64,000 bases of DNA from Saccostrea cucullata. Its lineage: Eukaryota. Position numbers and translations under genes: made by a program. Under the pieces are notes generated by a model. The model ran no database searches. It saw only the letters and a list, made by a program, of their open reading frames with translations, and was not told where the DNA came from. The stretch spans positions 62,001 to 126,000 of the forward strand of contig NW_026928915.1 in the NCBI RefSeq assembly GCF_032062105.1, written 5' to 3'. Below, piece after piece: positions 5,893-33,148 of the stretch (within the stretch, counting starts at the first letter, position 1; every line of letters starts with the position of its first letter).

Positions 5893-8800
5893 TTACAGTT
5901 TACTTGTACACATACCACCCCTTGACTTTAACTTTACATGAAATAAGTCCTGAGGGAGGTCAATATCCCATTTGCCATTCGCCAGTAACTCCACCGCAAG
6001 TCTTCCTATCTCATCACTGGACTTGGCTGCATATCCATTCCCTGCAATGGCTACCCCTAGCTGGCTGTGGATTAGGTCTATGTAGGGTCTGTTGCTAGGG
6101 GCAACATCCACCACACAACTGTCACCATGGAAAGAAAGTACTTTAACTCCTGTAATAAATCAAAGTGTTTAAATATTCAGTTATTTTTTGAGTGAAATAT
6201 AGATTTTGTCTCTCAGTTGATTTGATATACAGAAAAGCATGATTTACAAACCAACAATTTCTAAAAGGAGGCGAGCAGATGAAACAAGAATATCAACTAA
6301 AAGTCCTCATTGTTCATGTTCTGATGAGTGAAAATTCTTGAAAGTGACAGTAAACAAACAAGTCAAAAAGTCATTTTGTTTTTGGAATATATTTTAAAAA
6401 TAATAACAGGCCCAAGGGCCTTAACAGTCACCTGAGTACAATGTAACACTAAAAGATTCATAGATTGAATTTATTAAAAAAAATAAAATAAACTGAGAAA
6501 TGAAGCTATGTTGCCCAAAAGCAAGAGAAAAGGGATGAGCAGGGATCAACAGTCTAATTAATTTAGTGCTCAGTAGCAAATCTTAGAGTTTATCTATTTA
6601 CTTGTCTGTACTTGCCCACATATGTTGCTATCCCCATGTGGAATAAACAAAACAAAAGTTCTTGGGCACTGTTGGTAAATCTCTCTCAATATCTGCTAGA
6701 TAAGTATATAACCTTGTATCAAGTCCTCAGTGTTGAATTTAGTTATAAACAGGTCAAGTATTAGGTCATTCTCTTTTGTGACTTAAAGATTTGAGGAAGT
6801 TTATTACCTTGACCTTGTTGATGAGATCTTGGGTCAGGGTCATGAGATGAACTGGTGTAAGCACATAAAGAAACTATTTAAAACATACTGTTTTTCACCA
6901 AATAGATATGTCCAATACCAATAGTCACACCATTTGAAAATTGCTAATCAGTGAAAGACAATAATGCCTGATAAAAAAGACGTAAAACTCACTACTAGTG
7001 TGCATTGTTGAAAAAAAAAAACAATCAAGTTTACCGACAAATGGCAGAAAGACTTTAAATTTTAAAGGTAAAAGATTAAATGTACTTAAATCTACATAAT
7101 CAAATCCACGGTTCTAGTTTATTACAGTATAAAAATATATTTTGTTCTATTTTTGTCGTTAAAGGTGTTCCAATTGTCAGACAAAATGTCAATATAGAAG
7201 AAATAAACATAATTTACAGACAAGGACGACTTCCCTGAATGGAAGTTGATAACGATTTAAATTAACGTTTAGGTTTTTTTTATGACCAAAAGAAACGATA
7301 TGCAACAAAGAGCTCTACTTTCTTTCCATACGCACTTGGCGTATCGATGATAACCCTATGCTAATACTAAATACATGTATTGTATATCACTTTTTATTCG
7401 CGATAACTTTATTTTTGTGCATTTACGCGAGACAATGAGCTCGCGAAAATCATTCTCGCGTATAAAATTATTCCTTATACGTTTATATAGGAATAACAAC
7501 AATCCGTGAAAATTAAATCTCGCTAATAAAGAGTCAACGACTATTGCGAAAATAAGGTGTCGCGAAAATTTAGTGATCTACAGTATTAGCATTGATTTAC
7601 AGTAGATGGACAATCTAGAAAACTCAGCAAAACGGAACTTGTAATCAGATATCGGTTTATAACTTTATGTGTACGATAGGCTAAGAATTTATGTATTTTT
7701 GATACTTTTAAGTCATCGACTCCAATGATATGAATTTTCATACGGTGTTGGGTTGGGGAGGGTTACACCATCGATATATATCAGGTGCCTGCGACTCTTA
7801 TCTCAAAAATTTCATATTTTATCTTTAAGTTGCGATTGTTCAATATTGGTAAATATTATATAACAATTACGCTTTAATATTCCTTTATTTGCTTTTAAAG
7901 TTTAATTACTGAGCGAAAATTGTCAGGGTTAAATTTGTATGTTCTGTATACATGTACATGTATCTATACATTTGCCCGATGTCTTTACACTCAAAAGGAA
8001 GACCGCCTTTGTTTAGTGTGTGTGTGATCTTCTGTCTCTATTTACTTAGAACGATTGGTTTATATTTAATTTCATTCCTTCACTCAAAATAGACCTAGCT
8101 TTGCAAGAAGTTATTAAAACCAGCTAAAATATCTGTTATTCATGTCATATTTGATTAAATTATGGACACTGCTTATGGTTTCAAAATTAACGCGTTTCCT
8201 TGTCAGTGTGGTGAGAATAAATGCAATGGAAACCGCCTCTCAAAATTTACGTTAAAAGTCAAAAGGTTCGTAATTTTGCATATTGTTGACAATATGATTT
8301 GTGTTAAATCATGCTTTATGTGCAATAAAATGACATTACTAATGATTGATCAAAAGTTTTAATGTGTGCAAAGCTTGCCATGCAACAGATGATGCATATC
8401 ATTAAACAAAGATTTCATGAATATTTTATTGTTACGGGATCTTGAATGACCACACTTCATTTCATAAAATTTTTCAATTGAAATACACACAAGATTAAGA
8501 AATATCTTCTTTTTTTTTAAAAAAAAAATCTTTTCAACCTTGAAATGTAATATTATCAATGTAGACCATGTCGGTAATACTTGGGTTCATTATTACTTCA
8601 AGACACAATCAAGTCAATGGTAGTTTGACTAGTATATTTATTGACGGTAATAATATAAGAAAAACCTGAAATAAAGTCATTTTAATTAATAAACATTTAC
8701 AAATCCTTACTGACTTTACTTTTAAATTACAAATATAATAAGATATAGATAAGTTATAAATATATTTACCAGGCACACTATATAAATCAGCTACTAATAT

Positions 8801-11800
8801 TAAAGGTGACTATTCCCTTCAAGGGTGTAGCGCCGAGTGTGCGTGAATATTGTTATCCGCGGGAAAGTTAGTAAAAAGTTATTAATAGAAAGAAACTAGT
8901 CAAACCGGAAATGGTCAAATACGTCACACCTAACAAACATAAACACTCACACGTGGACATTCACACATGACAACACAAACGTAAACACATAGAAATAATT
9001 AAAACATTGAAACTGAAACATTTAATTACTTACACTGGTTACATATTCCCCCCTTTTATTAAATGGCTCCTGACATTCTCTGAAATTAAATATCAGGCAA
9101 ATGTTTTAATTCAAAGTGCTGAATCAACTCAATATCTATGTACAACAAATTCAACAATCCAGCAAATAAGCATAAAATAAAATCAAACCAAATTAAATAA
9201 TCAAACACCATGTGAATCCAAAAATGCATCACCAAAACACAACTCACTGACACTGAACACCAAACCTGCCAAAAACCTTTGACACATAAGACCTCGACAT
9301 TACTGTCCAAGAATCATATCTACTGAACCAACCGATATCAAATGAATATGTTCAAATCATCTCAGATTAAACATTAAATTTCATCCATTTATATCAAATG
9401 ATGATGGGGGCTCAATAATGTTACACTGTAAAATTACAGTATCAATTGTTTATCTTTAAATAAACAACATGTATCAGTTAAATTCATTCATAGATTCATT
9501 TATTTAGAAAAATATTCACATAAGTCATAAAAAACAAAAATAAAACACTATCTTCACTTAAGAAGTCCTTGAATTCACTGAATTCACTAATCACTTAACT
9601 CCGACTGTCTATTATTTTTTTTTTTTTCTAACTTGTCCATTCACCATATCTGTCTGGCTGCTTCTTAATTCTCGTTGACCGTCGTACGGGCATAGCTTCC
9701 TGTGACACATCAGGTACACTCTCGGAAGTTGGACTTGGCTCATTTCCACTATGGCTTGAATCGTTAACCCCTGGGGACTGAAATGATAAAGAATAATTAC
9801 CATTATTGAAATCATTGTCACTTAGATTAATACCCGAATAACTATGACCTTCATCAACTACTGATGAAACATCTTGAATAGATGAGGGCTGTACAGGTTT
9901 TTCTCCCATAGATCTGGTCCTCACGACTCTTCTCACAGTCCAATCTTCTGTGTCACTCTCTGTTTCTGATGAATCTGATGAATCTTTTGTCGCTGCTGGC
10001 ACCTGTCTATCTCCACTTTCTTTCTTTGTCTGTTTCCTTCTACTGTTCTGTTGTTTATACTGTATTTCCTCCCCCTCTTGTAAACCAGAATAAGGAAGAA
10101 GCATATTCCTATGCAGAGTCCTGGTTCTGCCTGTTTTACCCTCAGCTTTCACTCTAAACACAGGAACATCGGGATTTGGCATTTCCTTAACAGTATAAAT
10201 AGTTTCCTCCCACTTGTCAGCCAACTTGTTCTTACCCTTTAGACCAACATTCCTGACCAAAACTTTATCCCCAGGCTCTAACTTTGTCTCTCTTACTTTC
10301 ATATCATACCTCTGTTTGTTCTTTAAACCTGACTTTCTTGCCTCTTGAGATGCTATTGCATAAGCTGATTTCATTCTCTGCTGCAGCTTTTCCACATATC
10401 CCCTTGGATTAACATCGCCTTCATTTCCTGGGTCTAGTCCGAGGAAAGAATCAATTGGAAGTCTTGGACTCCATCCAAACATCAAGTAATGTGGGGAAAA
10501 ACCTGTTGCATCACTCTTTGTAGCGTTATATGCCTGAACCAAGGGAGCAACATGTTGTTTCCAGTCAGTCTTCTGTTTGGGATCCAGGGTTCCGAGCATC
10601 TTCAAAAGTGTCTGGTTAAACCTTTCTGCCGATCCATTGCCCATAGGATGGTATGGTGTCGTGCGGGTTTTCTGAATTCCTAGCAGCTTACAGAGCTCCT
10701 TTATAACTTTAGACTCAAAATTCCTGCCCTGATCACTATGTAGCTTTTCCGGAAATCCATAATGTAAAAAGTAATTCTCATATAAGGCCTATGCTACACT
10801 CGACGGTATAACCTGTGTGTCTATGTGTGTATTGAATTCATATGGACCTATTCTAAATCAGCTGTGAGTGTTGTGTTGTGTTTTGAACTGGTCGACCGTT
10901 GAAAAGGTGTGTTCGTATCATTGTGATTATTCACAGGCGGATCCCGAGAGGTGAATCCGAGAACTTCCGGAACCGTGACGTCACAGATGCGCGCAGCGAA
11001 CCAATGACCGACCAAAATGGAGTCTATGAACAACGTGTTGTGAATTAGTCTGCGGAGCAAAGGTACTGTAAACAATTGTGCAAACCAATGGTCATTTTCT
11101 TGTGTTATTCTATGTGCATGTATGTCATATTTGTTTGTGCAAGTGATTGTCTTCGTCTTATGTATTGTCTGTACTGAATACTGAGGACTAGTGTAAAAAG
11201 GGAATTCCCAAGGTCTATTTTTGTTTCTATTTATAGTAAACAAATCTGTTTGTAAACTTTTGGCTGTAGTAGTGTATTTTTTTTCTTTTTCAGGTTTATA
11301 ATTGTTTGTTTTTGCAAATTATTTTTGTATTTATTTATATTTTTTTCATTGTAAGTTCAATATCTATACTTTATTTATTTATTTATTTCTAGGTTAAGCT
11401 GAAATTTTATTTAGGTGTTGGTAAATTTAGGTAGCAGAAAGCCCAGTTCACTTTCTAACCAGCATGCAACCATTGCACTAATCAATCTAATTTCTTTCAG
11501 TCCAGTTGATCAGTAGACAGACCTACGGAGCAGAGAGTTATTGTGTGTGTGTCTGTATGTATTGTGAGTGTGTTAGTGATTTTGAATTTTAGGAATTTCA
11601 TCAGATGTCTGAGATGATTATGTACAGAATTATTTAAACTGGGTATCATAAGTTGAATTAATCCATCTTTAAAGTATTCAACAGAAAACATATTACCAGG
11701 TAACTTACTAAAGAGTTGAATAAGAGATATTACATCAGTTGCTGTGGTTGTATGTTGAAGGTGTATTGATCTGTTGTTGTGTTGAGGTGCTCAGTTAAAC

Positions 11801-14800
11801 AGTTGTATACTCAGTTGTTGAGTTGTAGTTGTGAATATTTATTTTATATCAGTTCAGTGTACAGTAGTGTTCAGTTGGTGTAAGTATTTGTTGTGAAGTG
11901 ACAGAAGTTGTTAGTAGAAATGTCTGATCAAGATAAACAAAAGGGTAGTGAGGATGTGTCCTCAGCAGAGGAAAAGAAACTTGATTTTGCTGGTGTTGCA
12001 ACCAGTACCCCCAAAACCACAAAAGATGGTAAAGATGGTAAAACCACAAAAGATGGTAACCCTTCAAAAACCACAAAAGATGGTAAAACCACAAAAGATG
12101 GTGACCCTATTAAAACATCAAAAGTCAGTGACCCTATAAAATCAGAGGTATCTGTACCTTCAGAACAGAGTGCAAAACCAAAGGTATCTGTACCTGATTA
12201 CAATGCACCGGCTTTGCATCAGGGACAGAAACACAATCCCTTTGCAAAGTTGGCATGTAATTTTGGTGACACTAGTAATAGCAGTAGCAAACTTCAAAAT
12301 ACCTTTTATGACAAGGATGGTAATAGCATTAATCAGGTGTATGAATTTAATACAAACATCCCAAGAATCCCACAATTCTCAGGGGATGACCCTCCTCAAA
12401 AGGGGGATGTTTCGTACAAAGAATGGAGATTCGAGGTACAGTGCCTGATGCGTGACCCTGATGTTAAATCAAATATTCTGATACAAAGTATTAGACGGTC
12501 ATTAAGGGGTACAGCAAAAACAATGTTGATTCCGTTAGGTGAGAAAGCAGGCGTTAAGCAAATTTTAGATAAACTTGACATTTTGTTTGGTGAAATTTCC
12601 AACAATGGCATGATTATGCAAGAATTTTTCAATGCTTTTCAACTACCGGGTGAGTGTGTTACATCATTTGGTTGTAGATTGGAGACTATGCTACAAAATG
12701 CTATTGATAGTGGTTATCTTGATCGTGCATCTAAGAATGACTTGTTAAGACATAAGTTTTGGACTTCATTAAGTTCAGAGAAGCTTAAGGCTCAAACGAG
12801 ACATAAATATGATGACATCAAGAATTATGACAGGTTGTTGTTAGAGATTAGAAGGGTAGAAAAAGAAATCTTGATAAGTTCTAGCACTTCAGAGAAAAAG
12901 CCTGTTCATCAGCATGGAATGTCAGTATCTGAAGACTTAGAGGAGAAGTTAATGGAGAAGATGAGGAACATGGAGACAAAATTAGAAGGTAAGATAAATG
13001 ACAAGTTCAACCAGATACTAGAGAAATTGGATGGTAGAACCAGTAATGTATCAGGTGGAGCTAATGAAAACAGAGGTAGAGGTGGTTACTACAGAGGACG
13101 TGGAGTTTGGAGAGGCAACTCTAATCAGTATAGAGGTAATTCCAATGACAGAAGGTTGAATGCTGGTCGAGGTCAAGGTCAGAGACGAGGTCAAGGAGGA
13201 AGTACAGGTAATTATAACCCAAACGCCTAGAGGTCTCTGATGAAGGCCGACCGGGGACCAGGATTTCATGTGAAGGCCAGCAATTAAAATGCAAAATGAT
13301 TGGTGAGTCAAATGAGACTATTGTTTTTATGAATGATAATTCTTTTACAGGTCTTGTTGACAGTGGATCAATGGTAACAACATTGTCATTTTCAGGTTAC
13401 AATTCCATGAAAAATCAACCAGAGTTAAAGGATTTATCTAACTTAGGGTTAGAGGTGTCTGTCGCAGATGGTTCTCTATTGAAATACAAGGGATATATAG
13501 AGTGTACTGTAAAAATTCCATTTATGGATGTAGAGTTATTTGTCCCTGTTTTAATTGTACCAGACACTGATTTCAATAGAACATGTTCTGTGATCATTGG
13601 AACTAATGTGTTGAGAATTTGTAGAGATTTGTTGGGTGAAGATTCCAATGAAATGAAAATAGCTCCAAAGGAATGGAGAGTAGCATTAAAGAGTATGAAG
13701 GGTAAGTGTTACCATGTCAAATCAGTGTGTAAGAAACCTATTACGGTACAACCTAATGAATCTACTGTAGTTAAGGGTCGAGTTAAAGGTTTACCGGGTA
13801 ACAACATGACAATGGTTTCTGAAAACTGTGATAATATTGACAGGTTTACAGTTTGTCCAAGGGTAGTTAAGTTTTCTACACCTACTACAAAGTCTACAGT
13901 GCAAATCAAGATTTGTAATATATCTGCTAAACCCATTTCAATTAGGCATGGCACTGTACTTTGCAATCTCCAAGAGGTAAAGGTTGTAGATAATTTTCCT
14001 GCATTAAAACCCAAATCTGAGGTGTGTGACCCTATTGAACTTGGAGTTAAGGTTGACTCAAGTGTACTTACTGAAGATCAGTTCAATACTGTGAGAAATA
14101 TTCTAAAACAGTACAGTCACATATTTTCCACAGGTCCATTAGATCTTGGTAGAACTGATTTAGTCAAACATTCAATTGAATTAGAGGACACAAAACCGTT
14201 TAAACAACCGTATCGCAGAATTCCTCCGGGTATGTATGAGGAAGTCCGTCAACACGTGCGTGAGATGTTAGACGCCGGAGTCATTCGCGAATCTAATAGC
14301 AATTATTCCTCAAACGTGGTACTGTGTCGGAAAACGGACGGATCATTGCGGTTTTGTCTTGACATGAGAATGCTAAACTCAAAAACGCGCAAGGATTGCT
14401 ATATGCTTCCTCGGTTTGATGACGTCATAGATACCCTGTATGGAGCCAAGTTTTTCAGCAAACTCGACCTACGATCAGGCTATTGGCAGGTAGAAATTGA
14501 GGAGAAAGATCGGCACAAAACAGCATTTTCGGTAGGTAATCTAGGTTTCTATGAGTGCAACAGAATGAGCTTTGGATTAACAAATGCTCCTGCAACTTTC
14601 CAAAGATTGATGGAGAAGTGCATGGGAGATATGCATTTGAAAGAATGTTTAATCTTTTTGGATGATGTGCTCATATTTTCAAAAACATTCGAAGAACATT
14701 GTGTTAGACTTAAAAATGTGTTTACAAAATTAGCTCAACATGGATTAAAATTAAAGCCATCAAAATGTGAATTATTCAAAACTTCTGTTACTTATTTGGG

Positions 14801-17800
14801 ACATGTAATTTCAGAAAGTGGTATCCAAACAGACCCAGAGAAATTATCCGCTGTTCGTGATTGGCCGACACCTTCCAACATTAAACAACTCCGCCAATTC
14901 CTAGGATTTGTGGGATACTATAGGCGCTTCATATTTGTAGACCATTTGTAGACCATGTCGGTACTTGGGTTCATTTATTACCTCAAGACACAATCAAGTC
15001 AATGGTAGTTTGACCAATATATTTATTGATGGTAATAATATAAGAAAAACCAGGCACACTATATATGTTGTATCTAGGCCTCTATAATTCACTGGATATG
15101 GAACTGAATGAAAAGGTCGGCGACTTTTCTATATGTACCCGCCTTCTCGCCAATCCGCTCCCCGGGGATTTTCCAATGGATCCTCAGTCTTGTATACCTG
15201 GTTTTTCAATTAACGTGGGCGCCATTTGTAGACCATGTCGGTAATACTTGGGTTCATTATTACTTCAAGACACAATCAAGTCAATGGTAGTTTGACTAGT
15301 ATATTTATTGACGGTAATAATATAAGAAAAACCTGAAATAAAGTCATTTTAATTAATAAACATTTACAAATCCTTACTGACTTTACTTTTAAATTACAAA
15401 TATAATAAGATATAGATAAGTAATAAATATATTTACCAGGCACACTATATAAATCAGCTACTAATATTAAAGGTGACTATTCCCTTCAAGGGTGTAGCGC
15501 CGAGTGTGCGTGAATATTGTTATCCGCGGGAAAGTTAGTAAAAAGTTATTAATAGAAAGAAACTAGTCAAACCGGAAATGGTCAAATACGTCACACCTAA
15601 CAAACATAAACACTCACACGTGGACATTCACACATGACAACACAAACGTAAACACATAGAAATAATTAAAACATTGAAACTGAAACATTTAATTACTTAC
15701 ACTGGTTACATCAATATAGATTATACCAAATATTTTGGCTTAAATGGCCCTTCTAAGATCAAAAATTTACAAAATTATCTGATATTTTGATCCATACTTT
15801 AAATGACAGGTGAAAACAACTTGTCGATCAATGTGTTTCGATAATGACAAAGCACGATGTATATACATACGATGAAATCACCCTCTCACTTTTTAGCGTG
15901 TATTTCATTGGTTTAAAGTGCCAATAAGAAAGATTTCTGCAAGAACTATTCAATTGGAATTATCATTTATACTACTATTATAATACATTGTATCACCTTT
16001 AATTTTGGGAATGAATAGGTGTTATCTTATTCAGCTCGAACAGATGATATCACTTATTCAAATAGGTTATTTTAGTCATCATTTCACCAATTCAAATCAA
16101 ATAGATGATAACACTTATTCGAATAGGTGATACATGTATCATCAATTCAAATACAGGCACGTAGTATCCGGGGGGCCAGGGGGGCCTGCCCCCCCCCCCC
16201 ACTTTTTTCCCTAACATTACCTTTACTATAGAAAATGTCTATTGAAAAGATGGTTGGCCCCCCCACTTTTTACCACAGTATATACAAAGCAAGAAATATA
16301 GGAAAAAATTGGAAGTGAAAGGAAGTTCGACTTGAAAAAAGTTGGCCCCCCCCCCCCCCCCCCCCCCCCCCCACGAAATAGGATTTTCGAGTTTGGGTAA
16401 GTTTCAATTTTCCTTTTTTTTTTTTTTTTACTTGTCAACTTTTTTTAGGTAAAGAAAAAATTTTTTCTCAGGTTGGCCCCCCCACTTTCAAAAACGATGC
16501 TACGTGCCTGAAATAGATGTATCAACAATGCAAACGCTCAAAAGATGAAATCACCAATTTGAATATTTGATGCCAACAATGAAAAGGTGACATCTTCAAT
16601 CCGAATAGGTGATAACACTTAGCGCCAGTAAATAGCAAAACAGCCCCACATAGATATTAACTTTTACAGCAAGGAAGACAACACGATTTTAAAAAAACGT
16701 GGAATTTGATTTCATTTTTTTTTTTACGTTTTCACTCAAATGAGAGAAATCGGGCTTTGAAGGACCTTTACGAGGCACTCAAGGTTCAAATATTAGTAAC
16801 AATAAGGACTCTTCAAACCGTGCTGCCTTGATATGGGACCTTTGACAGAGTGCTTAGCGAAGGCACAGTTGCTCGCTATATTTAGCGAAAAACGAACGGT
16901 GTCAAAGGATTGTCTTTCTGGGATCGAATCGAAGATTGTTCGAACACGTAGCGAGTGCTGTATCAACTTTCTTGTAACCGTGCTGATTAATATCTACTGA
17001 CGAATAAAACAAGAAAATATACTTCATTGATTTATATTAAAACCAAATATCTACTCCCTCGTGCAATCCGAATATTCTAATCAAAAATTGAAATGAAACC
17101 CAAGTACCTTTCACCACACTTAAGATCATGTCTGCCATTTGCCGAGTAAGTCGAGCGTCTGGTCCCTGGTCGAACCACTTCTTCATCTGCGTCCCGGAAC
17201 GCAGTAGCTTTGGTACCGAGTCATGAGAGTGTCCAAGTTTTATGTAGTACTTTCCTGAAAGGAAATTTAAGTCCAAATGCTACATATACGAGTATTTTTT
17301 GTAAATAGACAACAAATTTGTGTTCTTTTTAAAATATTCAAGGTTTTACTAATACCATCAGGATAAAGAATTGGAGGAAGCATGTAGAAGACGACAGGTG
17401 CCCGGGGATCAACAGGATAATCCCGACTCCAGTCATCTCCACCTCGACCGAAATAGAGGACTGAAGGCATGGTGCTATAAAACATTAGACGGTATAAACA
17501 CGTGTAAAACGAAAAGAGCCCGGACAAAAAGTCGGAAGCACTCTCCATGCAATGTCATACCTTATTTTGTTAGCATCCTCTTTGCTGATTTCCAGTTTCG
17601 TGACCGCCAATGGATAAAGCTTTGTATCGGGAGAAACTTCATTTCCTAACAGATCTCTGAAGGCTGTAAACGCACCAGTGGCTACAAGGACTTTCTTAGC
17701 TAGAATTTTTGTCCCAGAGTCGGTCGTCACCTCCATCAGCATACCGGGATTTTCACTATCGGGGACTACACGAGTTATGCTTCGAACCTCCTCTTGTATG

Positions 17801-18913
17801 TGCAGACAACCGTTAGTCTTTGCAATCGTTATTTGGGCTTTTACGAGTCTTCTGGGACTGATGTATCCTGCCGAATGCTTCTCAAACACCACCTCGTCAT
17901 CTTTTGGAATTGACAGAAAAGGAAAGAGAGATCGAGCCTCTGTTCCGCTCAAGACACTTGCGCCTAAATTATCTTTCTCAACAACATATTTTACCGAGGT
18001 AATGTAATTTCCTCCTCGACTTCCAACTGAAAGACAACCAACTTCCTTGGCAATATCGATTCCTGTATAAGATAAAAAAAAAAAACTCCATAAGAACCTA
18101 CTTTTATGTCAAAGTAGACAATCGCAAAGCATAATAATTTGGCCGATAACATGGCCAAACTTTTGCATAGACATATTTTCAGGATTTTTTAAACAAGTTG
18201 ATAAATGACTAGTCAAAAAAGAGACTTGAAATTGGACATTTCTTTCTTACAAGTCGATATATATAATCTGTTGACAAGTAATGACAGATCTTATGCAACC
18301 ATATTATTTAACCTATGAGAAATGCATGTCTGCACTTTTTTTTTTATTAAAAGCTCTTCATGGGGCAATATAATCAGCATTTTTATTGTATTTATGTTCC
18401 ACTGACTCAAAATGTAAATGACTTTATCTGACATTAAGTTTACCGGATTCTCTCTCAATTTCGGCGTATCTAGGTATTGACTTTTGAGCTAGTCTGGCCC
18501 AGACAGGATCAGATGTTGACTGCATGTAAATTCTCCCCTCATCGTAATGTCCACCATATATGTCCCTTGGCGAATCTTCGGAGCGTTTCTGAGAAAGGAA
18601 ATGTGTTTTGTTTTCTTTTTATATTCTGAATTTTGTTTGTGTTCTTCTTGCTTCTTATAGTACATTTGTATTGTGCATTTTTAAAAATTGAATCAGCTGC
18701 GTGATGTTCCAGGCCAAAAGAATTTGAACTTGAATTTCATCTTCTTTATTTAATATAATAATATATGCTAAAAAGGTTCCATAATTGATACCTGCTTGTA
18801 CTCACCCTGTCAGGCTCATCCGGGCCAATCAAGCAGACATTGAGAAACTTAGACGCATGCTTGGCTGCGGCGGATCCAATCAAACCTGCGCCCACAACGC
18901 AAAGATCAAACAT
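5893..18913 (-). CDS. FAD-dependent oxidoreductase, sarcosine oxidase/DAO-like, 6 exons, 425 aa
   Basis: Exons 18913-18806, 18588-18444, 18062-17561, 17474-17356, 17254-17108, 6149-5893 with consistent phases. Rossmann motif DLCVVGAGLIGSAAA, plus GGHYDEGRI, AGYISPRRLV, VLVATGAF, LPPILYPDGKYYIKLGH and AGNGYAAKSSDEIG. Confidence 0.9.
7378..7585. mobile_element. MITE, TACTGTA...TACAGTA family (TA-flanked)
   Basis: Imperfect terminal inverted repeats; related copy in the opposite orientation at 46965-47176. Confidence 0.7.
8560..9043 (-). repeat. 3' LTR (484 bp)
   Basis: Direct repeat of 15227-15710; I spotted only one substitution by eye. Adjacent to the PPT. Confidence 0.95.
9044..9060 (-). 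promoter_or_regulatory. Polypurine tract of the Gypsy element
   Basis: Minus strand AATAAAAGGGGGGAATA lies immediately before the TGTAACC start of the 3' LTR. Confidence 0.85.
9628..10790 (-). CDS. Gypsy integrase, N-terminally truncated (rve core second half, GPY/F-type region, C-terminal tail)
   Basis: YGFPEKLHSDQGRNFES...RTTPYHPMGNGSAERFN, TGFSPHYLMFG, KLADKW and RRSTRIKKQPDRY. Homology stops at ~10790 with no HHCC motif or first catalytic Asp. Confidence 0.9.
11920..13230 (+). CDS. gag: Gypsy Gag (PNMA/MOAP-like capsid) with RGG-rich C-terminus
   Basis: PRIPQFSGDD...SYKEWRFEV, LRGTAK and LRHKFWTSL capsid motifs. N-terminal KTTKDG repeats. ATG at 11920. Confidence 0.88.
   Translation: MSDQDKQKGSEDVSSAEEKKLDFAGVATSTPKTTKDGKDGKTTKDGNPSKTTKDGKTTKDGDPIKTSKVSDPIKSEVSVPSEQSAKPKVSVPDYNAPALHQGQKHNPFAKLACNFGDTSNSSSKLQNTFYDKDGNSINQVYEFNTNIPRIPQFSGDDPPQKGDVSYKEWRFEVQCLMRDPDVKSNILIQSIRRSLRGTAKTMLIPLGEKAGVKQILDKLDILFGEISNNGMIMQEFFNAFQLPGECVTSFGCRLETMLQNAIDSGYLDRASKNDLLRHKFWTSLSSEKLKAQTRHKYDDIKNYDRLLLEIRRVEKEILISSSTSEKKPVHQHGMSVSEDLEEKLMEKMRNMETKLEGKINDKFNQILEKLDGRTSNVSGGANENRGRGGYYRGRGVWRGNSNQYRGNSNDRRLNAGRGQGQRRGQGGSTGNYNPNA
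13218..14933 (+). CDS. pol: Gypsy Pol fragment: aspartic protease and reverse transcriptase, truncated before RNase H
   Basis: LVDSGS protease; RT motifs DGSLRFCLDMR, KLDLRSGYWQ, MSFGLTNAPATFQ, IFLDDVLIFS and FLGFVGYYRRFI. The frame is open from 13218 and is -1 relative to gag. Confidence 0.93.
15212..15224 (-). promoter_or_regulatory. Primer binding site (tRNA-Lys-like)
   Basis: Minus strand TGGCGCCCACGTT begins 2 nt after the 5' LTR end and is close to the Lys PBS TGGCGCCCAACGT. Confidence 0.8.
15227..15710 (-). repeat. 5' LTR (484 bp)
   Basis: Near-identical to 8560-9043; followed on the minus strand by the PBS. Confidence 0.95.
16154..16510. mobile_element. G/C-run-rich MITE with 5-bp TSD
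   Basis: TIRs CAGGCACGTAG...CTACGTGCCTG, flanked on both sides by AAATA. A partial related end occurs near 1040-1123. Confidence 0.8.
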
Positions 18914-19924
18914 TCTCAAAGTGTCTTATCGTCTAACTTGGCAATAAAAGTAGAAACAAAGGTCAAAAACTGAGTAATGATCGCGGTCTTAAGATATGAA
19001 CCATTTCCATTGAGACCTACTTCCTGTCCGATGAGCAAGTATACCCACAGCAATTTGGATTAAAACAAGGTCGTGCTTTATCTCTGGGGAAATAAACACA
19101 TATGTATATTGAAACAATTAGAGAGTAAAGTATACATTGTATATTGTTTTATATCGTCATCGGGGATGGGAATTCATTCATGACTACTCCCACAATTAAA
19201 TGGATGAAGGTGATAAACGCAGAGCTTGTTTTGATAATTGTATTTATTTTAATGAACTTATTAATTTTTGGTTATCATCCACAAAATATAATTTTTGTTA
19301 TTGTTCCTCAGAATAATATGTCTTCTTTAGTCTTCATTAAAAGGGTCTTTGTAACCATTTGCAAGTAGACACAGAAAACGTGCTTTATGTTCCAAAATGT
19401 ACATTAGCAAAATGCCACTGAAATCTGTTGCATTAGACGGAGTATACATCTTAAAAAAATAAAATATCAGTAAAACATTCTTAATATGCAAATCTCCTCC
19501 AAACAAACATAAATTGGAAAGAGTGCATAACTATCTGTCAAAACTGTCTTAAAAATCCAGATAAAAAGATATCTGTAATGATTTTTAGTTAAATTTTTTT
19601 CTGCGCGCATTAAAGATCATTTCTGAAGTATTTTGCGCATGTAATCAATGTTTGATTAAAATAAATGATACATGTATACCCGTGTATCTTAAATTCTGAA
19701 TTATTGCGTGCATGTATTCAAATGGTTGATTCAAATAAATTATTAAAAGGAGCATTAATTGAATTATTGCTTTCTTCATTTGAATTGAGGGTAATTCAAT
19801 TAATGTACGTAATGCGATATAATTGAATTATCTATTGTTCTGTTTAAAATAATACCGGTAATAATAAAACATATGCGTGAATTATTTTTCACTGATAAAA
19901 TCGTTTTAAAATATACACATTTAT

Positions 19925-21768: not shown

Positions 21769-23445
21769 ATGTTTTTCAAGCTTTTTATACTGTGTTTATT
21801 AGTAACAGTTGCCCACTTCCACTCACATTATAAGGAACTCATTTTGAACGGGGACCGAATCCCACACCCGTGCTGCCCCGGGCGCACCTGGAGCCGGGTA
21901 GGACACACCGCACCGTCATCTACTGCTCTCAACAACTTTGGAAGAGTGAGTACTATTTTTAATCTGGTCGACCCAATAAGATTTTTATCTTAGAAAGTTT
22001 TCTTTTTTATCCTTTGAAAATATTTTAAATATAGTAACTTAAAAATATCATTGGGTTAATGAATTATATTAACTTTTTATTAAAAAAAACAACAACAACA
22101 ACATAGTAGTATGTGTAAGTATTTTTATCCTCAACAGAAAGACTTTCATTGAATATATTATAAATACTGTATCCTCCGTCTTTGGCTAAAAAATGAAAAA
22201 TAAATTAAATAAAATAAATGTTTCAAAAATAAGTTCTTTAATTTCAAGAAATGAGAAATTGTCATGTACCTTAATTACAGCATTTTCAAAGAAGTCGTCA
22301 CTTGTTTACAAAGGAGTTATGCTTAGCTGATTCTGACGGCGATGGTGTTAGTAACGGAATAGAACTGGGACTGAACACCACGCTATACGACCTGCCAACA
22401 CTCTGTCATTTCATTGACTCTTCTCACATGGCAAGGAAATTCAAGGAAGTGGTCCATTTTCTGAAGATGAGCAAATTGCTGACAAACCCAACTGGACATC
22501 CAGGTAAAAAAAATTGATTCAGAAAATATTATCTAAATGAAAAACTTGAAAGATAAAGATCATATCACACACCGGGAGCTTTATACTAGTTATATTGACA
22601 TTTCGTAGTCAAGTTTTAACTTAAAAAGAAACAAAGGCCTAACACAATTAGTATGAAACAAGTCAGCCAAATTAAGGTCATATTTTTTTGCAAACTTTTT
22701 GTCAAAAATTTTGAAAATAACAACTTAGGTCATGTTATTCTAGAAATTTGTTATTTGCATCATGCAATGAAATTAGGTAAAAAAAATATATACCAATATC
22801 CAGGCATCCATTTTTTGTTTGTATCATCTGTCCTTAAGAAGCAATAAAGGGTTACATTTGCTAATTTATATAAGGCTGACATTGTTGATTTTAAACACCT
22901 GTTACATCAACTTGTTTGTCAATGGCCTGCCTCAGTTCAAAAATTGGCAGTACTTGGGGCATGCCCTTGATTATCGAATAAAAGCCATATACAGGTGATA
23001 GCAAGATATTACTACATGAAAAAGGGAAGTTGAGAGTCTTCTCATTTATCATACAATTTAGTTGTCAGTTGGCCTTTTTGCCTAAGTAAAATGAGTTTTA
23101 AGGTTTCTGAACTCGCATTTTTATATTTATATATTCTCAATTCATGGAAAACAATATACAACCACAAATTAAACTCCCTCGAAAAAGCTCGAACATTCCT
23201 ACATTTGAATGGTCACTGATATTTAGGAAAGTCTTCCCTGCTAACTAAGTGGGAGGGAAATTGTGTTTTGACATCGGACTGTTTAATAAAAAATGAATAT
23301 AAAGCGTATAGAAAGCATTATTGATAGCATCTTGAATTAATATTTTCAGACTGATTTTTGGTTACAATATATGTTTTAATATTTTTCAGGTTTTTGCGAC
23401 CAAAACACTGGTATGTGTCGACCCAACTTTCCATGTGACTGTTAG
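21769..23445 (+). CDS. Secreted temptin-like protein, 3 exons, 151 aa
   Basis: Exons 21769-21945, 22281-22503, 23390-23445. Signal peptide followed by the temptin signature ILNGDRIPHPC, VGH, LNNFG, LCLADSDGDGVSNGIELG, HPG. AATAAA lies just downstream. Confidence 0.85.
22885..23075 (-). mobile_element. Decayed Penelope-like RT fragment in temptin intron 2
   Basis: Minus strand reads GQLTTKLYDK...NFPF..SNI..SPVYG with stops and frameshifts. Confidence 0.6.
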
Positions 23446-24949
23446 TTTGTGGGAAATAAAAACTGCAACATGGACATTACAAATGTATACTGTTCTTATT
23501 TTTAATTTATCATTATTTATGTTGTATATGTGAATAAATTATGATGAAGTGGAATGAATTGGGTTTAACAAATAAATGATGCAAAATTACTTATGATTGA
23601 TGTTGTCTTTTTATAGAATATGCAATTATAACGCAGATTTCTACTGATTGATTGATATATTGTCAGTATTGTCATGATTAATGCCTTTTTAAAATTCTAT
23701 GTTACACCATTAAAACTTTACTCACATAAATGGAAAATTTTAAACAAGAGGAACACGTTCCGTAACAAGCACCTGAATATAAAACACAGGCCCATAGGAG
23801 GGGGGGGGGGCAGCCATACAAAGTATAAAAAAGGTTACCAGACGTTTTTATCAAGGGGGCACGAACATATTATAGTAGCTATGTTTTTTATAGAACATAA
23901 TATGTTGGCAAAATAAGGGGGGGGCGCCGTTCCCCTGGTTCCTAAGACCATGATACATCCTGTAAAGGGATCCATATTTTGGTAAATAATTATACAAGTA
24001 CACAAATGAACTGAAAGAAAAAAAAGATTAAAACAAAGAATCACCAAAACCCAGGATGGACTCAGAAAATTATCTAGATTTAGACAGTCTTATTCGCTTC
24101 GTAACTATGCACTTAGTTTAGGTTTTTAAAACAAAGAATTATCGCGTGCTTTTCACTACATGATCTTTAGAGCCCAACTTTAGAATCCTTGACCAAAATG
24201 CCATGAATTTTACTATTATTGAGAAGTCTAGCACTTAGCTTGTATTATAGAAAATCGATCCAGATTTTATAAATAAGAATTGATACATTTTGATATATGT
24301 CTCAACTGAACGCACCTTACCACGTGCCAGAATCTCTGATCAGAGAACCATGAATATAAAAATTCAGGAAAAGGTACTCTTTCTTACCATTCGTATAATT
24401 AACTTGTGTGTTAAATTTATTAGGGATGGGGGGGGGATTGTTTGAAGAATTTAATAATTTTCACTGTATGATCTATATAGAGAGTCTTTTAGAGACCCAA
24501 CCTGGATTTTGCAATTGTTGGTTTAACAATGTTTTCTTGTATTCAGTGTTTTAATACAAAGTCGTAAGTCGTAGACACATTTTAAAAATAAGTGTTTTTC
24601 AAAGGATACGTAATGGAATGGGTTATCTAATGACCGATCTTTGCGTTTTCCCGAATTTACTTTGCTCTGGTTTCCCTTTGGTTTAATTTAATATTTTTTA
24701 AGTTTAAAAAGGATTATGCATTTTAAGGTATTCGAGATATGGTTAAGTTAACCTTAAGTTTAGATGCTCTTCGATTTTCATATTTTACTCAATTATTTAC
24801 ATCGAAAAAGGCCTGTTCAAACAAAACTTGGGTATCGACATTGTAACATAATGGAATATTGTTCTTATTTTGACCTTCTTCTTTTGTTCATTTCAATACA
24901 TGTTTTAGGGAAAAAACAACAAAAAATTAAGATCGCGGAACATTAACTG

Positions 24950-29725: not shown

Positions 29726-32700
29726 ATGGAGGCTGAGGAGGAAGACTTTCCAAGAACAATAATATTGGGCAACCCAGAAAAGAACAGCAAAATCAAAGTA
29801 CAGTGGGCAGATGATTCCTTCAGGGTTGGATCAGGCTTTGGGGTACAATCCAACACCAAACTTGTTTCACTTCTGGATAAACAAAGATCATCAATTGAGG
29901 AACCCCCTGTTAAACAGTTCTCTCTTGTTGACAAACAGAATACAGAGGACAAAAACTCAATTGAAAATTCTACAAAGACACATGAATTAGCTACAAATAA
30001 ATACTATGATGACATGTTAAATGTGATACCAAATCAAACTTCAAAATCAGAAAATTTAGAAATGGAACATCCAGCTCAAAATGAGGATGTGAAACCAGTA
30101 ATCCAAAGCATTGAGTGTAGAAATTTAAATGAAAATGACAAACATCTGGAAAGTAAAGCAGAAGGTGATGTATGTAATAGCCTGCAAATTCACAGAACAT
30201 CAAATCAATCTGCAGAGAGAGATGATAGCACAGAAACTTATTCTTCTGATAAAAGTGAAAGCAAACTTACTGAAGGCAAAACCCAATGTTGGGTTTCGAT
30301 TCTTCAGAAACCCAGTAGTACTGTTTTGCCAGGAAACTTATCAACATCTACATCAAATGCAACTTCCAATCCAGAAGCCACTTTAAATGAAAAAGGTGCT
30401 TCATTTATTATGAATAGTGATACCAAAGTTCTGGAAAAGTTAGGCAAAACCAAAGCATGGACATCAATTCTCAAGAAACCCACCAATTCATCTTTGGTAG
30501 CAAACTCACTGACATCTACATCAAATGATACATGTAATCCAGCTGCCACTGTAAATAAAAAAGACCAAACATTACCGGCATTAAGCATTGATGAGAACCT
30601 TGCTTCACTAGTGAGTTTGACGGATGAATGTCACAATAAACTTTTTCCTTTGCAGAAGAAACAAATAGAAGCATGCATTCCAAATACGCCAAAAGTTGAT
30701 TCCTCAGTGAAGTGCATTGTTTCAATGGCCTCTGCAACAGAGAAAAAACTGGCAGAAGAGAAGAAGGTGTATTCTGTTTCTCTGTTGAATCAGACTTCTT
30801 CATTCAACAAAAGCCACTCTGCTTTCCAGGAAAATTTTAAACAAGCGAATGATTCTGCAGAAAAACAAAGTATTTCAAAGCACGGGGCATCCCATAAGAC
30901 ATTAGTTTCTTTATTAAATGGGAAGACATTTCCTATGTCTGTTCCATTGAAGAATGTACAAGAAGGATATAGCATAACTTCTGAAATGCATGTAAAATCT
31001 CCAACAAATGATTTTTATAGCCTTACAAAAAGAAAGTCTGAGCAGATTGACACCTCTTTGGATGAAGCATTTGGGAAAGAATGCAGTCCATCTGAAGCTA
31101 TTAAAAGAAGGAAAACTGACAAACAACATGCCTCAAAATCTGATGACGGAGAGTCTTTCGATGTTTTCATTGATCCAAACTTTGACACTGCGCACGAAAA
31201 TGAAGAAACAAGTTATAATAATGAGGTCAAAAAAGAATTTCATGATTCAGATTTCCATACATTTGATTCTGACACTAGTAGACTAGATACTGAGAATAAT
31301 AGTGGGAGTGAGGCAACAACAAGCTTGTTTATCAAGCAGGAAACCCTTGATCCTGAATATGGTGATGAACCATTGGTTTCTACTGAAAATGTCAACAATC
31401 CAGTATCTACCATTTCAACAATGAATATTCGAATAAAAGAGGAGGCTTCTAGTGAGGATGGACACTTGTTCAATAAAAATGGTTGTGATGCTGAAGATTC
31501 AGAAGACAGAAATATTTCCTTTGTTAAACAGGAAGTGTTTGACCCAGAATATGAAGACATGCCCCCTGATCTGTCAATGAATGCTCCCTCAATGTCACAA
31601 GAATCAACTGACTTTGAAAACGAAGACATACCTCCTGTTTTATCACCTAAAAAGGAAGCAGACGATTCGGAATTTGAAGAGTGGAATGAAGATTGTGAGG
31701 ATTCTCCACCAGTTTTACAGAAAGAAGACAATCTTTCCAAAGAAGATACTACACTGAAAATTCCAAAAAGAATCACCAAAAATAAATTACGCAAGCAAGT
31801 AAGGAGTCGTGATAAAAATTTGATAAATGACAAATTTATGTGTCCCATATGTAAGGCTGTATTTGAGAAGATAGAGGACTTTGATGTTCATAAAGCTTTA
31901 CATTCTGGGCAGCAGATATTGTCTGACAAACAGTGTCCGGAAAAATTTGTCATAAAGCCTTTGACTATCAGGCAGGATGGAAATAGAAAATTCAAATGTG
32001 AATATTGTGGAAAGGCTTTTAATCGCCCATCGAATCTGAAAGAGCACACTCGAATCCACACTGGCATGTACCCTCACAGATGTCAGTTATGTGACAAGGG
32101 GTTCCATACTAGGTCTAGATTTCTGGCTCACATGGCGCGTCATGATGAGATAAAAGAAACAAAAGAGGCACAGGACATAGTTCTTAAATATACAAAGGAT
32201 GACCCAACCAATGAAGAAATGGAGATTCAGGAATTTTCAGATATGAAGTTAAGGAAATATGTGTGCAACATTTGTAATGAAATCTTTGATAAAGTAACAC
32301 TGTACAGAATCCATCGCCTAAAACACAGAGGAGAAATTCCACATACTTGTAATTCTTGTGGTAAAGCTTTCCCATGCAAGTCTGACCTTGTACGACATGA
32401 AGCCACACATTCTGATGAGAGACCCTACAAGTGTCATATCTGCTTCAAGTCCTTCAAAAGACGCAATGCATTGGTAGATCACTTAACAATCCACAAAAGA
32501 GAAGAGAGCAATGAATCTGGAGAAAAAGACTCTGTTGACAGCATCATGAAAACTTTGGAACCCTCCATAGAAAGCATCGTTCAGAGCTTGGAGCCAAATT
32601 CAAGCTCACCAGGGAAAAGTGTCACAGAAACTGAAAAAGAATTTGAAAATTTCAAGGAAATGGAAAGACCCATTTACACAGATGATGGACAAAAAATAAT

Positions 32701-33148
32701 CAACAGTAAATTCTACTGCAAGGAGTGCAAGATTTCATTCAGTGCCAGACGAGAATATTCCATGCACAGGTTTCAGCATAATGGTGGACATCCTCATGTA
32801 TGTGAGGTCTGCAACAAAGTTTATCCATATAAATCCGATTACGATCGCCATGTGGCAACTCATTTGGGGAGGAAACCTTACGTTTGTCACTTGTGCAGCT
32901 GTGAATTCTCCAGGAAACACTACCTCCAAAAACATCTTCTGAAGCACAAAAACACTCGCATCAGTCTGGGTGGGATGTCCAAGCCTGGCAATGACTTTCA
33001 GATAGAAATTGATAATCCAGAAAAATCTGCTAGTGAAGTAAGTGATTGTGAGGATAATGGTGATGTTGATCTAAGAACCACTGCAGGAAAACTGGAGACA
33101 AGTTATGATGAAGATGGTGCTATGTTCTTGTTTGTAACTGATGATTAA
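29726..33148 (+). CDS. C2H2 zinc-finger transcription factor (9 fingers), 1140-aa single coding exon
   Basis: Nine CxxC-x12-HxxxH fingers in the C-terminal ~440 aa with TGEKP-like linkers; long acidic disordered N-terminus. Candidate acceptor at 29699-29700 suggests an upstream non-coding exon. Confidence 0.93.
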   Translation: MEAEEEDFPRTIILGNPEKNSKIKVQWADDSFRVGSGFGVQSNTKLVSLLDKQRSSIEEPPVKQFSLVDKQNTEDKNSIENSTKTHELATNKYYDDMLNVIPNQTSKSENLEMEHPAQNEDVKPVIQSIECRNLNENDKHLESKAEGDVCNSLQIHRTSNQSAERDDSTETYSSDKSESKLTEGKTQCWVSILQKPSSTVLPGNLSTSTSNATSNPEATLNEKGASFIMNSDTKVLEKLGKTKAWTSILKKPTNSSLVANSLTSTSNDTCNPAATVNKKDQTLPALSIDENLASLVSLTDECHNKLFPLQKKQIEACIPNTPKVDSSVKCIVSMASATEKKLAEEKKVYSVSLLNQTSSFNKSHSAFQENFKQANDSAEKQSISKHGASHKTLVSLLNGKTFPMSVPLKNVQEGYSITSEMHVKSPTNDFYSLTKRKSEQIDTSLDEAFGKECSPSEAIKRRKTDKQHASKSDDGESFDVFIDPNFDTAHENEETSYNNEVKKEFHDSDFHTFDSDTSRLDTENNSGSEATTSLFIKQETLDPEYGDEPLVSTENVNNPVSTISTMNIRIKEEASSEDGHLFNKNGCDAEDSEDRNISFVKQEVFDPEYEDMPPDLSMNAPSMSQESTDFENEDIPPVLSPKKEADDSEFEEWNEDCEDSPPVLQKEDNLSKEDTTLKIPKRITKNKLRKQVRSRDKNLINDKFMCPICKAVFEKIEDFDVHKALHSGQQILSDKQCPEKFVIKPLTIRQDGNRKFKCEYCGKAFNRPSNLKEHTRIHTGMYPHRCQLCDKGFHTRSRFLAHMARHDEIKETKEAQDIVLKYTKDDPTNEEMEIQEFSDMKLRKYVCNICNEIFDKVTLYRIHRLKHRGEIPHTCNSCGKAFPCKSDLVRHEATHSDERPYKCHICFKSFKRRNALVDHLTIHKREESNESGEKDSVDSIMKTLEPSIESIVQSLEPNSSSPGKSVTETEKEFENFKEMERPIYTDDGQKIINSKFYCKECKISFSARREYSMHRFQHNGGHPHVCEVCNKVYPYKSDYDRHVATHLGRKPYVCHLCSCEFSRKHYLQKHLLKHKNTRISLGGMSKPGNDFQIEIDNPEKSASEVSDCEDNGDVDLRTTAGKLETSYDEDGAMFLFVTDD

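What the first reader, a model, noticed from the sequence alone, without database searches (positions are those of the whole stretch)
8560..15710. Young Gypsy element with gag-pro-RT flipped antisense between intact LTRs: a candidate mobile antisense or defective-interfering element
Seen: the LTRs (near-identical), PBS, PPT, TSD and integrase are all on the minus strand, but ~10791-14933 (long leader, gag, protease, RT) is on the plus strand. RNase H and the integrase N-terminus are absent. Flipping the block restores normal Gypsy order. Inference: any transcript from the 5' LTR, or from the host gene (also minus strand), would be about 4 kb antisense to the family's gag-pol while keeping the LTRs, PBS and PPT needed for reverse transcription and integration (a leader packaging signal may be inverted). 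It could therefore be a piRNA/siRNA source and possibly be mobilised in trans. Alternatives are a one-off post-insertion rearrangement, a truncated nested insertion of a second element, or a misassembly.
Basis: partly seen in the sequence, partly recalled or inferred. Interest (0 to 1): 0.8.

Follow-up and report, generated by a model that had tools for sequence, protein, structure and literature searches.

The report
Scrambled dead Gypsy retrotransposon copy
This is one young, broken copy of a Gypsy-type jumping gene whose middle section is flipped, and I found no sign that it has spread, so it is best read as an ordinary one-off copying accident and not a new kind of mobile antisense element.

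Summary
Window 8560-15710 is a Ty3/Gypsy LTR element in minus sense. Its 484-bp LTRs differ at one base, and it has a 4-bp TSD (TCAA), a PPT and a PBS.

Compared with normal-order copies of the same low-copy family in this genome, 10785-14932 (most of the leader, gag, protease region, RT) is inverted. A stretch of 1,264 bp is missing; it held RNase H, the integrase zinc finger and the first half of the integrase core.

Junction 1 is a 4-bp microhomology. Junction 2 (14933-15065) is a patchwork: an 11-bp slippage duplication, the first PBS bases with the last 105 bp of an LTR from another family lineage, and a 16-mer of LTR U3.

No other place in the 1.17-Gb assembly shares either junction. Four public runs showed only the normal junctions.

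The two leader pieces overlap in reference coordinates and are of different subtypes. With the foreign LTR filler, this excludes a simple cut-and-flip of one molecule. It favours multi-template switching before integration, although a later rearrangement or a misassembly is not excluded.

Internal inversions are a known class of provirus defect. The mobile antisense or defective-interfering reading has no support here.

The parts
8556..8559 (.). Target-site duplication TCAA, left copy
   Evidence: Same 4 bp at 15711-15714. Empty site in paralogous locus C22717.
8560..9043 (-). 3' LTR (484 bp, TG..CA)
   Evidence: One mismatch to 15227-15710.
9044..9057 (-). Polypurine tract AAAAGGGGGGAATA abutting the 3' LTR
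   Evidence: Read directly from the sequence.
9058..9627 (-). 3' non-coding region. Holds a splice acceptor (AG at 9080-9081, exon from 9079 downward) that family RNAs use.
   Evidence: Four RNA reads of run X22 join 11062 to this acceptor. Sequence.
9628..10788 (-). Integrase remnant: second half of the catalytic core (HSDQG and ER motifs kept) and the C-terminal tail, open from the junction to its stop
   Evidence: Translation. Weak rve_3 hit. Aligns to integrase residues from about 467 onward of the normal copy C17813.
10785..10788 (.). Junction 1: AGGC microhomology between the integrase side and the leader side
   Evidence: Integrase homology ends at 10788, where a contig of X1 runs on into normal integrase. 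Leader homology to C23805, C13935 and C13580 starts at 10785.
10785..14932 (+). Inverted block: leader part 2 (10785-11920), gag (ATG 11921 to 13230), pol frame with RT (13296-14932, ending just after GYYRRFI)
   Evidence: Reverse-complement alignment to normal copies. Pfam PNMA and RVT_1.
14933..15065 (-). Junction 2 filler. 14933-14943 is one copy of an 11-bp tandem duplication ATTTGTAGACC. 14942-15051 is the first 5 nt after the LTR (AA spacer + TGG) plus the last 105 bp of an LTR of another lineage. 15050-15065 is an exact 16-mer of LTR U3 (= 8769-8784), overlapping the start of leader part 1.
   Evidence: Filler has 2 mismatches to the C5593 LTR against 6 differences (4 substitutions, 2 indels) to the element's own LTRs. 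No other copy bridges 14932/14933 or 15051/15052.
15055..15209 (-). Leader part 1, still in element sense. Its tail is of the C9538 subtype.
15210..15226 (-). PBS (TGGCGCCCACGTTAA read on the minus strand, 15224 to 15210) and 2-nt AA spacer (15225-15226)
   Evidence: Read directly from the sequence. The tRNA assignment was not tested.
15227..15710 (-). 5' LTR
15711..15714 (.). Target-site duplication TCAA, right copy

Best explanation
This is a single, very recently integrated, replication-defective copy of a low-copy Ty3/Gypsy family. It probably lies in an intron of a DAO-family gene, in the same sense as that gene.

Its internal region was scrambled in one complex event. About 4.1 kb (leader to RT) is inverted. 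RNase H and the integrase N-terminal half (1,264 bp) are lost. A patchwork of LTR pieces was inserted at one breakpoint.

The event most likely happened before integration, during the round of reverse transcription that produced this insertion. I infer several short-homology template switches, including strand switches, between two co-packaged family genomes and their DNA intermediates. The finished cDNA still had normal LTR ends, so proteins made from intact family members could integrate it.

The anatomy, the uniqueness of the junctions and the mixed ancestry of the pieces are shown. The timing and the copying mechanism are inferred. The copy encodes no new product in element sense and is not shown to be transcribed, packaged or re-mobilised.
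For: Normal ends:
- The LTRs differ at 1 of 484 positions. The TSD is intact and a paralogous locus has the empty site.
- gag, RT and integrase-remnant frames are all open, so the whole copy is young.

Inversion and deletion:
- Both are defined against four or more normal-order copies.

Junction signatures typical of copy-choice:
- 4-bp microhomology at junction 1.
- At junction 2, an 11-bp slippage duplication, a GG-mediated 102-bp internal LTR deletion, and an ATATA/GTGTG homology between leader and LTR U3.

More than one template:
- The filler LTR is of the C5593 lineage (2 mismatches) and not the element's own LTR 170 bp away (6 differences).
- Leader part 1 ends in the C9538 subtype and leader part 2 begins in the C23805/C13580 subtype. 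Both cover the same variable segment. One molecule cannot simply have been cut and flipped.
- The RT end is 148/148 identical to C17813, while the integrase-LTR part is 97.7%.

Uniqueness:
- No other place in the assembly shares any junction.

Precedents:
- Inversions are a recognised class of defects arising at reverse transcription, 6% of 531 HIV-1 proviruses (PMC6235535).
- Complex LTR-retrotransposon insertions with a TSD, near-identical outer LTRs and a different inner LTR have been attributed to template switching before integration (PMC1950507).
Against: - No read-level confirmation of either junction was obtained. The four runs laid were contig sets or shallow RNA, and they showed only the normal continuations.
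- Switching strand polarity over 4.1 kb during reverse transcription is rare and needs a DNA or second-RNA template of the opposite sense.
- The two leader breakpoints fall within about 35-47 nt of each other in reference coordinates. A chromosomal inversion would explain that naturally; the template-switch model needs an extra assumption, such as a pause site or a template end there.
- Three or four lineages seem to contribute, whereas a particle holds two genomes. The parents would then themselves have to be mosaics.
- The U3-R-U5-PBS contiguity of the filler exists only in DNA intermediates or read-through RNA.
Confidence: 0.55

Rival explanations
1. Post-integration rearrangement. A normal or already deleted copy inserted here, and its interior was later inverted and deleted by chromosomal double-strand-break repair or replication-based template switching. 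Filler would have been copied or captured from another family member, or left by further nested insertions and deletions.
For: - The two leader breakpoints nearly coincide in reference coordinates, as expected for an inversion.
- Microhomology and templated insertions at junctions are also typical of repair and replication-based rearrangements.
Against: - The LTRs differ at only 1 of 484 positions and all frames are open, leaving very little time for a second rare event.
- The filler LTR is not a copy of the element's own LTR 170 bp away. It belongs to a lineage found on another contig, and no such LTR lies nearby in the contig.
- The overlapping leader segments are of different subtypes, so a cut-and-flip with fill-in is excluded.
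- A nested-insertion route needs at least three elements and three clean deletions, and the internal LTR piece has the wrong orientation to belong to the flipped block.
Confidence: 0.25
2. Assembly artefact. Sequence from several family copies was joined wrongly, or a piece was oriented wrongly, inside a real insertion.
For: - The family has about ten copies of 88-98% identity, which could confuse an assembler.
- The pieces look like different lineages.
- No public read or contig bridging a junction was seen, whereas normal junctions were.
Against: - The 64-kb window has no N, so this is not a mis-oriented scaffold piece with gaps.
- Assemblers join on long shared words, not on a 4-bp microhomology or through an 11-bp tandem duplication and an internally deleted LTR fragment that exists nowhere else in the assembly.
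- Both flanks, LTRs and TSD are coherent with an empty site elsewhere.
- The runs laid are not known to be the assembled individual, and contigs drop rare variants.
Confidence: 0.1
3. This is a member of a propagating non-autonomous lineage that carries gag-pol in antisense. It would be mobilised in trans by intact family members and would act as a source of antisense, piRNA or siRNA, or as an interfering genome.
For: - LTRs, PBS, PPT and 172 nt of leader are intact and in sense.
- If the rearrangement predates integration, this copy could in principle descend from a rearranged parent.
- Normal family members are represented in RNA libraries, so helper proteins and sense targets may exist.
Against: - No second copy of any junction occurs in 1.17 Gb, and all candidates were scored. 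None occurs in four runs or in metagenome contigs.
- Most of the leader, the usual site of packaging signals, is inverted.
- The filler places an extra R-U5 with AATAAA about 170 nt past the PBS. This would be expected to end many LTR-driven transcripts before the flipped block (inference from the sequence).
- The element holds no internal inverted repeat, so it makes no hairpin on its own.
- Any antisense-oriented intronic TE copy gives the same kind of antisense RNA.
Confidence: 0.05

Closest known systems
Defective retroviral proviruses with internal inversions (the 'inversion' class in near-full-length HIV-1 proviral sequencing, PMC6235535)
   Same: An integrated copy has normal LTR ends but an internal stretch that aligns to the reference only when reverse-complemented. 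It is accompanied by a deletion, is attributed to errors of reverse transcription, and is replication-dead.
   Different: This one is a germline copy of an animal Ty3/Gypsy retrotransposon, not a somatic provirus of an exogenous virus. Its junction carries LTR-derived filler from a second lineage.
Complex LTR-retrotransposon insertions made by abnormal template switching before integration (Sabot and Schulman 2007, PMC1950507)
   Same: There is one TSD, highly similar outer LTRs and an internal LTR (here a fragment) that differs from them. The daughter is a fusion of two parent sequences inserted as one unit.
   Different: The Triticeae complexes are head-to-tail (three LTRs, two internal regions in the same sense) and much larger. 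Here the internal LTR is a 121-bp remnant and the coding block is inverted.
5'-inverted LINE-1 insertions (twin priming; from my own knowledge, see also PMC2912911 for the 5'-inverted class)
   Same: A retroelement copy bears an internal inversion plus a small deletion or duplication at the breakpoint, made during the insertion event itself.
   Different: LINE-1 uses target-primed reverse transcription at the chromosomal nick. An LTR element makes its cDNA in a particle and integrates through its LTR ends, so the mechanism cannot be the same.
Antisense TE fragments in piRNA clusters such as Drosophila flamenco (from my own knowledge)
   Same: A host-driven transcript would contain gag-pol of an active family in antisense.
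   Different: Those are dense arrays of many fragments in dedicated, specially licensed loci with mapped piRNAs. Here there is one copy in an intron of an ordinary enzyme gene, and no small-RNA evidence.

Membership tests
Ty3/Gypsy (Metaviridae) LTR retrotransposon | Direct LTRs with TG..CA ends flanked by a 4-6 bp target-site duplication | tested here: met
   484-bp LTRs with 1 mismatch, TCAA duplication, and an empty site in a paralogous locus.
Ty3/Gypsy (Metaviridae) LTR retrotransposon | PBS next to the 5' LTR and PPT next to the 3' LTR on the same strand | tested here: met
   Both lie on the minus strand. The matching tRNA was not identified.
Ty3/Gypsy (Metaviridae) LTR retrotransposon | pol domain order RT - RNase H - integrase | tested here: met
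   Met in the normal family copy C17813: RT end, RT_RNaseH_2, Integrase_H2C2 and rve in one 855-aa frame. In the window copy itself RNase H and the integrase N-terminal half are deleted and RT is on the other strand.
Ty3/Gypsy (Metaviridae) LTR retrotransposon | Aspartic protease between gag and RT | tested here: inconclusive
   No Pfam hit in residues 1-355 of the pol frame at E <= 0.01. The frame is open and long enough.
Defective provirus or retrotransposon copy with internal inversion | An internal stretch aligns to normal copies only as reverse complement, while both ends align directly | tested here: met
   4,052 bp are inverted at 94% against C9538, with direct alignments on both sides. 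The same holds for C13580, C23805, C13935 and C5593.
Defective provirus or retrotransposon copy with internal inversion | The rearrangement arose during reverse transcription, before integration | not testable with these tools
   Only indirect support: mixed ancestry of the pieces, microhomology junctions and the young age of the copy.
Trans-mobilised non-autonomous LTR element or defective-interfering genome | Several copies with the same internal structure at different loci with different TSDs | tested here: not met
   Junction queries found only the window itself, and all 12, 26 and 26 candidates were scored.
Trans-mobilised non-autonomous LTR element or defective-interfering genome | The RNA is transcribed and packaged by family proteins | not testable with these tools
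   The few RNA reads at 97% or better cannot be assigned to this copy, and none spans a junction.
piRNA/siRNA source locus | Small RNAs or antisense transcripts mapping uniquely to the locus | not tested

The most novel reading that the evidence does not exclude
The rearranged genome was not made in this insertion round. It would descend from a rearranged parent that is unassembled or lost, so it has been mobilised in trans at least once. It would then be a retrotransposition-competent Gypsy derivative carrying 4.1 kb of its own family's gag-pol in antisense, able to feed antisense or small RNAs against the family wherever it lands.
Probability: 0.05. Interest if true: 0.65.

Novelty: new member of a known kind. 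Interest (0 to 1): 0.2.

Why it matters
If the preferred reading is right, this copy is a germline record of a multi-step strand-switching error by a Ty3/Gypsy reverse transcriptase in an animal. Its junction details (slippage duplication, a foreign LTR piece ending in the first PBS bases, microhomologies) are of some use to people who study reverse-transcription fidelity and recombination between co-packaged elements.

It does not open a new question. Inverted defective proviruses are known, and antisense TE RNA from an intron is commonplace. For annotation, this copy should be recorded as one rearranged element and not as two nested ones.

Tried and rejected
- Simple cut-and-flip of one molecule: rejected. 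Leader part 1 and leader part 2 both contain the same variable leader segment but in different subtypes.
- Filler templated from the adjacent 5' LTR: rejected. It shows 6 differences to the element's own LTR against 2 mismatches to the C5593 LTR.
- Filler as an exact minus-strand strong-stop DNA (R-U5 from the transcription start). I considered this because the long LTR piece stops just after a TCAGG preceded by an AT-rich box. I dropped it when the adjoining 16-mer proved to be LTR U3, 102 bp further upstream.
- Autointegration: rejected. The LTRs are direct and terminal with a host TSD. The internal LTR end is followed by PBS bases and is not joined at its CA.
- Truncated nested insertion of a second element: unlikely. 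The internal LTR piece is antisense to the flipped block, and both blocks align to the same family copies at similar identity.
- C17813 as an alternative assembly of this locus: rejected. It has different flanks and 97.7% identity.
- An exact-protein look-up of the RT frame that runs into junction 2 found nothing.
- Exact junction patterns found nothing in JGI metagenome contigs.
- The reads call gave no record bridging a junction. This is uninformative for this locus.
- Notes of the scan gave no related lead.
- Pfam did not confirm my reading of 5896-6159(-) as the last DAO exon.
Full report
**What is there**

A self-comparison of window 7500-17000 finds two direct repeats, 8560-9044 and 15227-15711, at 99.8% identity. 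It also finds a third, partial copy at 14942-15051 at about 93%.

Read on the minus strand, the repeats are 484-bp LTRs with TG..CA ends and a single mismatch at sense position 289. TCAA flanks them on both sides. A polypurine tract abuts the LTR at 9044-9057. A TGGCGCCCACG primer-binding site follows the other LTR after an AA spacer.

A diverged paralogous locus on contig C22717 is collinear with both flanks. It joins window 8555 directly to 15713, so it is an empty site. The outer structure is therefore one ordinary, very young LTR-element insertion in minus sense.

**The flip is real in the assembly**

- Pfam places a PNMA-type gag in 11908-13230 and RVT_1 in 13296-14951, both on the plus strand. 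It gives only a weak integrase-core match in 9628-10644 on the minus strand.
- The genome (1.17 Gb, 23,869 contigs) holds about ten copies of this family at 88% identity or better.
- In C9538 the order is normal. Window 8891-10795 and 15055-15725 align directly, while 10902-14932 aligns only as reverse complement (4,052 bp, 94%).
- C13580, C23805, C13935 and C5593 show an uninterrupted LTR-PBS-leader-gag order. Window 15226 down to 15075 and window 10785 upward are neighbours on one strand in those copies.
- The 1,264 bp missing between RT and the integrase remnant encode RNase H, the H2C2 zinc finger and the first half of the rve core in the normal copy C17813.
- The remnant starts 11 residues before the HSDQG motif and runs open to its stop.
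- gag-RT and integrase belong to the same family, because both align to the same copies at similar identity.

**The junctions**

Junction 1 is a 4-bp microhomology (AGGC, 10785-10788) between integrase and the leader.

Junction 2 is a patchwork, read here on the plus strand:
- RT homology ends at 14932, just after the GYYRRFI codons.
- An 11-bp unit ATTTGTAGACC then occurs twice.
- The second unit continues into the last 105 bp of an LTR in the same orientation as the outer LTRs. It is preceded by the complement of the AA spacer and TGG of the PBS.
- That LTR piece stops at the equivalent of 8666. It is joined through CC (GG in element sense) to an exact 16-mer of LTR U3 (15050-15065 = 8769-8784).
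- The 16-mer merges with leader part 1 through an ATATA/GTGTG similarity.

The LTR piece has 6 differences from the element's own LTR, which lies 170 bp away. It has only 2 mismatches to the LTR of the copy on C5593.

**Not a simple inversion of one molecule**

The family has two subtypes of a short variable leader segment. Leader part 1 of the window carries the complete C9538-type segment. Leader part 2 begins with the complete C23805/C13580-type segment. Both pieces therefore cover the same reference interval with different sequence. A cut-and-flip, even with staggered ends, cannot produce that.

Two further observations point to at least two parental templates:
- the filler LTR is foreign to this element;
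- the RT end is 148/148 identical to C17813, against 97.7% for integrase-LTR.

**Is it a lineage?**

No. Queries across junction 1, across 14932/14933 and across 15051/15052 returned only the window itself. All other hits stop at the breakpoints, and all candidates were scored.

Exact junction patterns are absent from JGI metagenome contigs.

Of 24 public runs listed I laid four on 10400-15400. No record bridges a junction. Contigs of X1 at 10788, and of X5 and X7 at 14932, run on into the normal integrase and RNase H continuations. These runs are contig sets or shallow RNA, and they are not known to come from the assembled individual. They show that normal family members are present and represented in RNA libraries, but they say nothing firm about this locus.

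**Host context**

DAO-family (FAD-dependent oxidoreductase) exons lie on the minus strand at 18749-18925 (profile positions 1-41) and 17488-18108 (positions 79-231). The last third of the domain is not found before the element. An open stretch at 5896-6159(-) looks to me like it, but Pfam did not confirm that.

The element is therefore probably intronic and in the sense of the gene. Host pre-mRNA would then contain gag-pol in antisense. The same is true of any antisense intronic TE copy.

**How it most likely arose**

The copy is very young and its ends are normal. Its pieces have mixed ancestry, and its junctions show microhomology and slippage. These features fit a burst of template switches during reverse transcription in a particle with two different family genomes, followed by normal integration.

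The logic is the one used for complex LTR insertions in Triticeae (PMC1950507). Inversions are a listed class of reverse-transcription defects in HIV-1 proviruses, 6% of 531 (PMC6235535).

The weak points are these:
- a polarity switch over 4.1 kb is rare;
- the two leader breakpoints nearly coincide;
- more than two lineages seem to contribute;
- no reads confirm the junctions.

| Reading | Probability |
|---|---|
| Pre-integration rearrangement | 0.55 |
| Post-integration rearrangement | 0.25 |
| Misassembly | 0.10 |
| Propagating antisense element | 0.05 |

- The element has no internal inverted repeat and no new frame with a family match in element sense.
- Most of the leader is inverted.
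- The filler puts a second R-U5 with AATAAA about 170 nt beyond the PBS. I would expect this to end many LTR-driven transcripts before the flipped block (inference).

**Verdict**

This is a correctly observed, well-defined, single defective copy. It is a new member of a known kind, and interest is low.

Noticed in passing
window 11062/11063 (+) and 9079-9081 (-): Four RNA reads of run X22 join the leader at 11062 (AAG|GTACTG donor) to an acceptor (TTTAATTTCAG|AGAATG) about 20 nt upstream of the PPT. The reads carry one mismatch to the window, so they come from a normal-order family copy. Family RNA is therefore spliced across all of gag-pol. No DNA copy of the joint exists in the assembly.
   Followed up: partly
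window 10920-11030 (+): The leader has a G+C-rich stretch with TGACGTCA and CCAAT motifs just upstream of the splice donor. It could be an internal promoter or regulatory module of the family.
   Followed up: no
window 17488-18108 (-), 18749-18925 (-), perhaps 5896-6159 (-): These are exons of a DAO-family FAD-dependent oxidoreductase gene on the minus strand. The Gypsy copy probably lies in one of its introns. The last exon was not confirmed.
   Followed up: partly
G000:C22717:3275-6874 (L035): This locus is collinear with both flanks of the insertion at 70-87% identity and lacks the element. It is a segmental duplicate or a very divergent haplotype.
   Followed up: partly
window 16154-16310: A short repeat with thousands of candidate copies in the genome (2,862 first-look candidates, 88-98% identity) lies next to a G-run near 16300-16400.
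   Followed up: no
window 29726-33148 (+): An uninterrupted 1,140-aa frame carries C2H2 zinc fingers.
   Followed up: no
G000:C13580:26000-31950; C10622:26368-28436 and C3095:131110-133183: Other family copies are internal-deletion derivatives in normal order. C10622 and C3095 look like duplicates of one locus. The family is low-copy and mostly defective.
   Followed up: partly
G000:C9538:30929-33138 and 23411-23749: The near full-length normal-order copy carries about 2.2 kb in its leader and about 340 bp in one LTR that the window copy lacks. These may be insertions there or deletions here.
   Followed up: no
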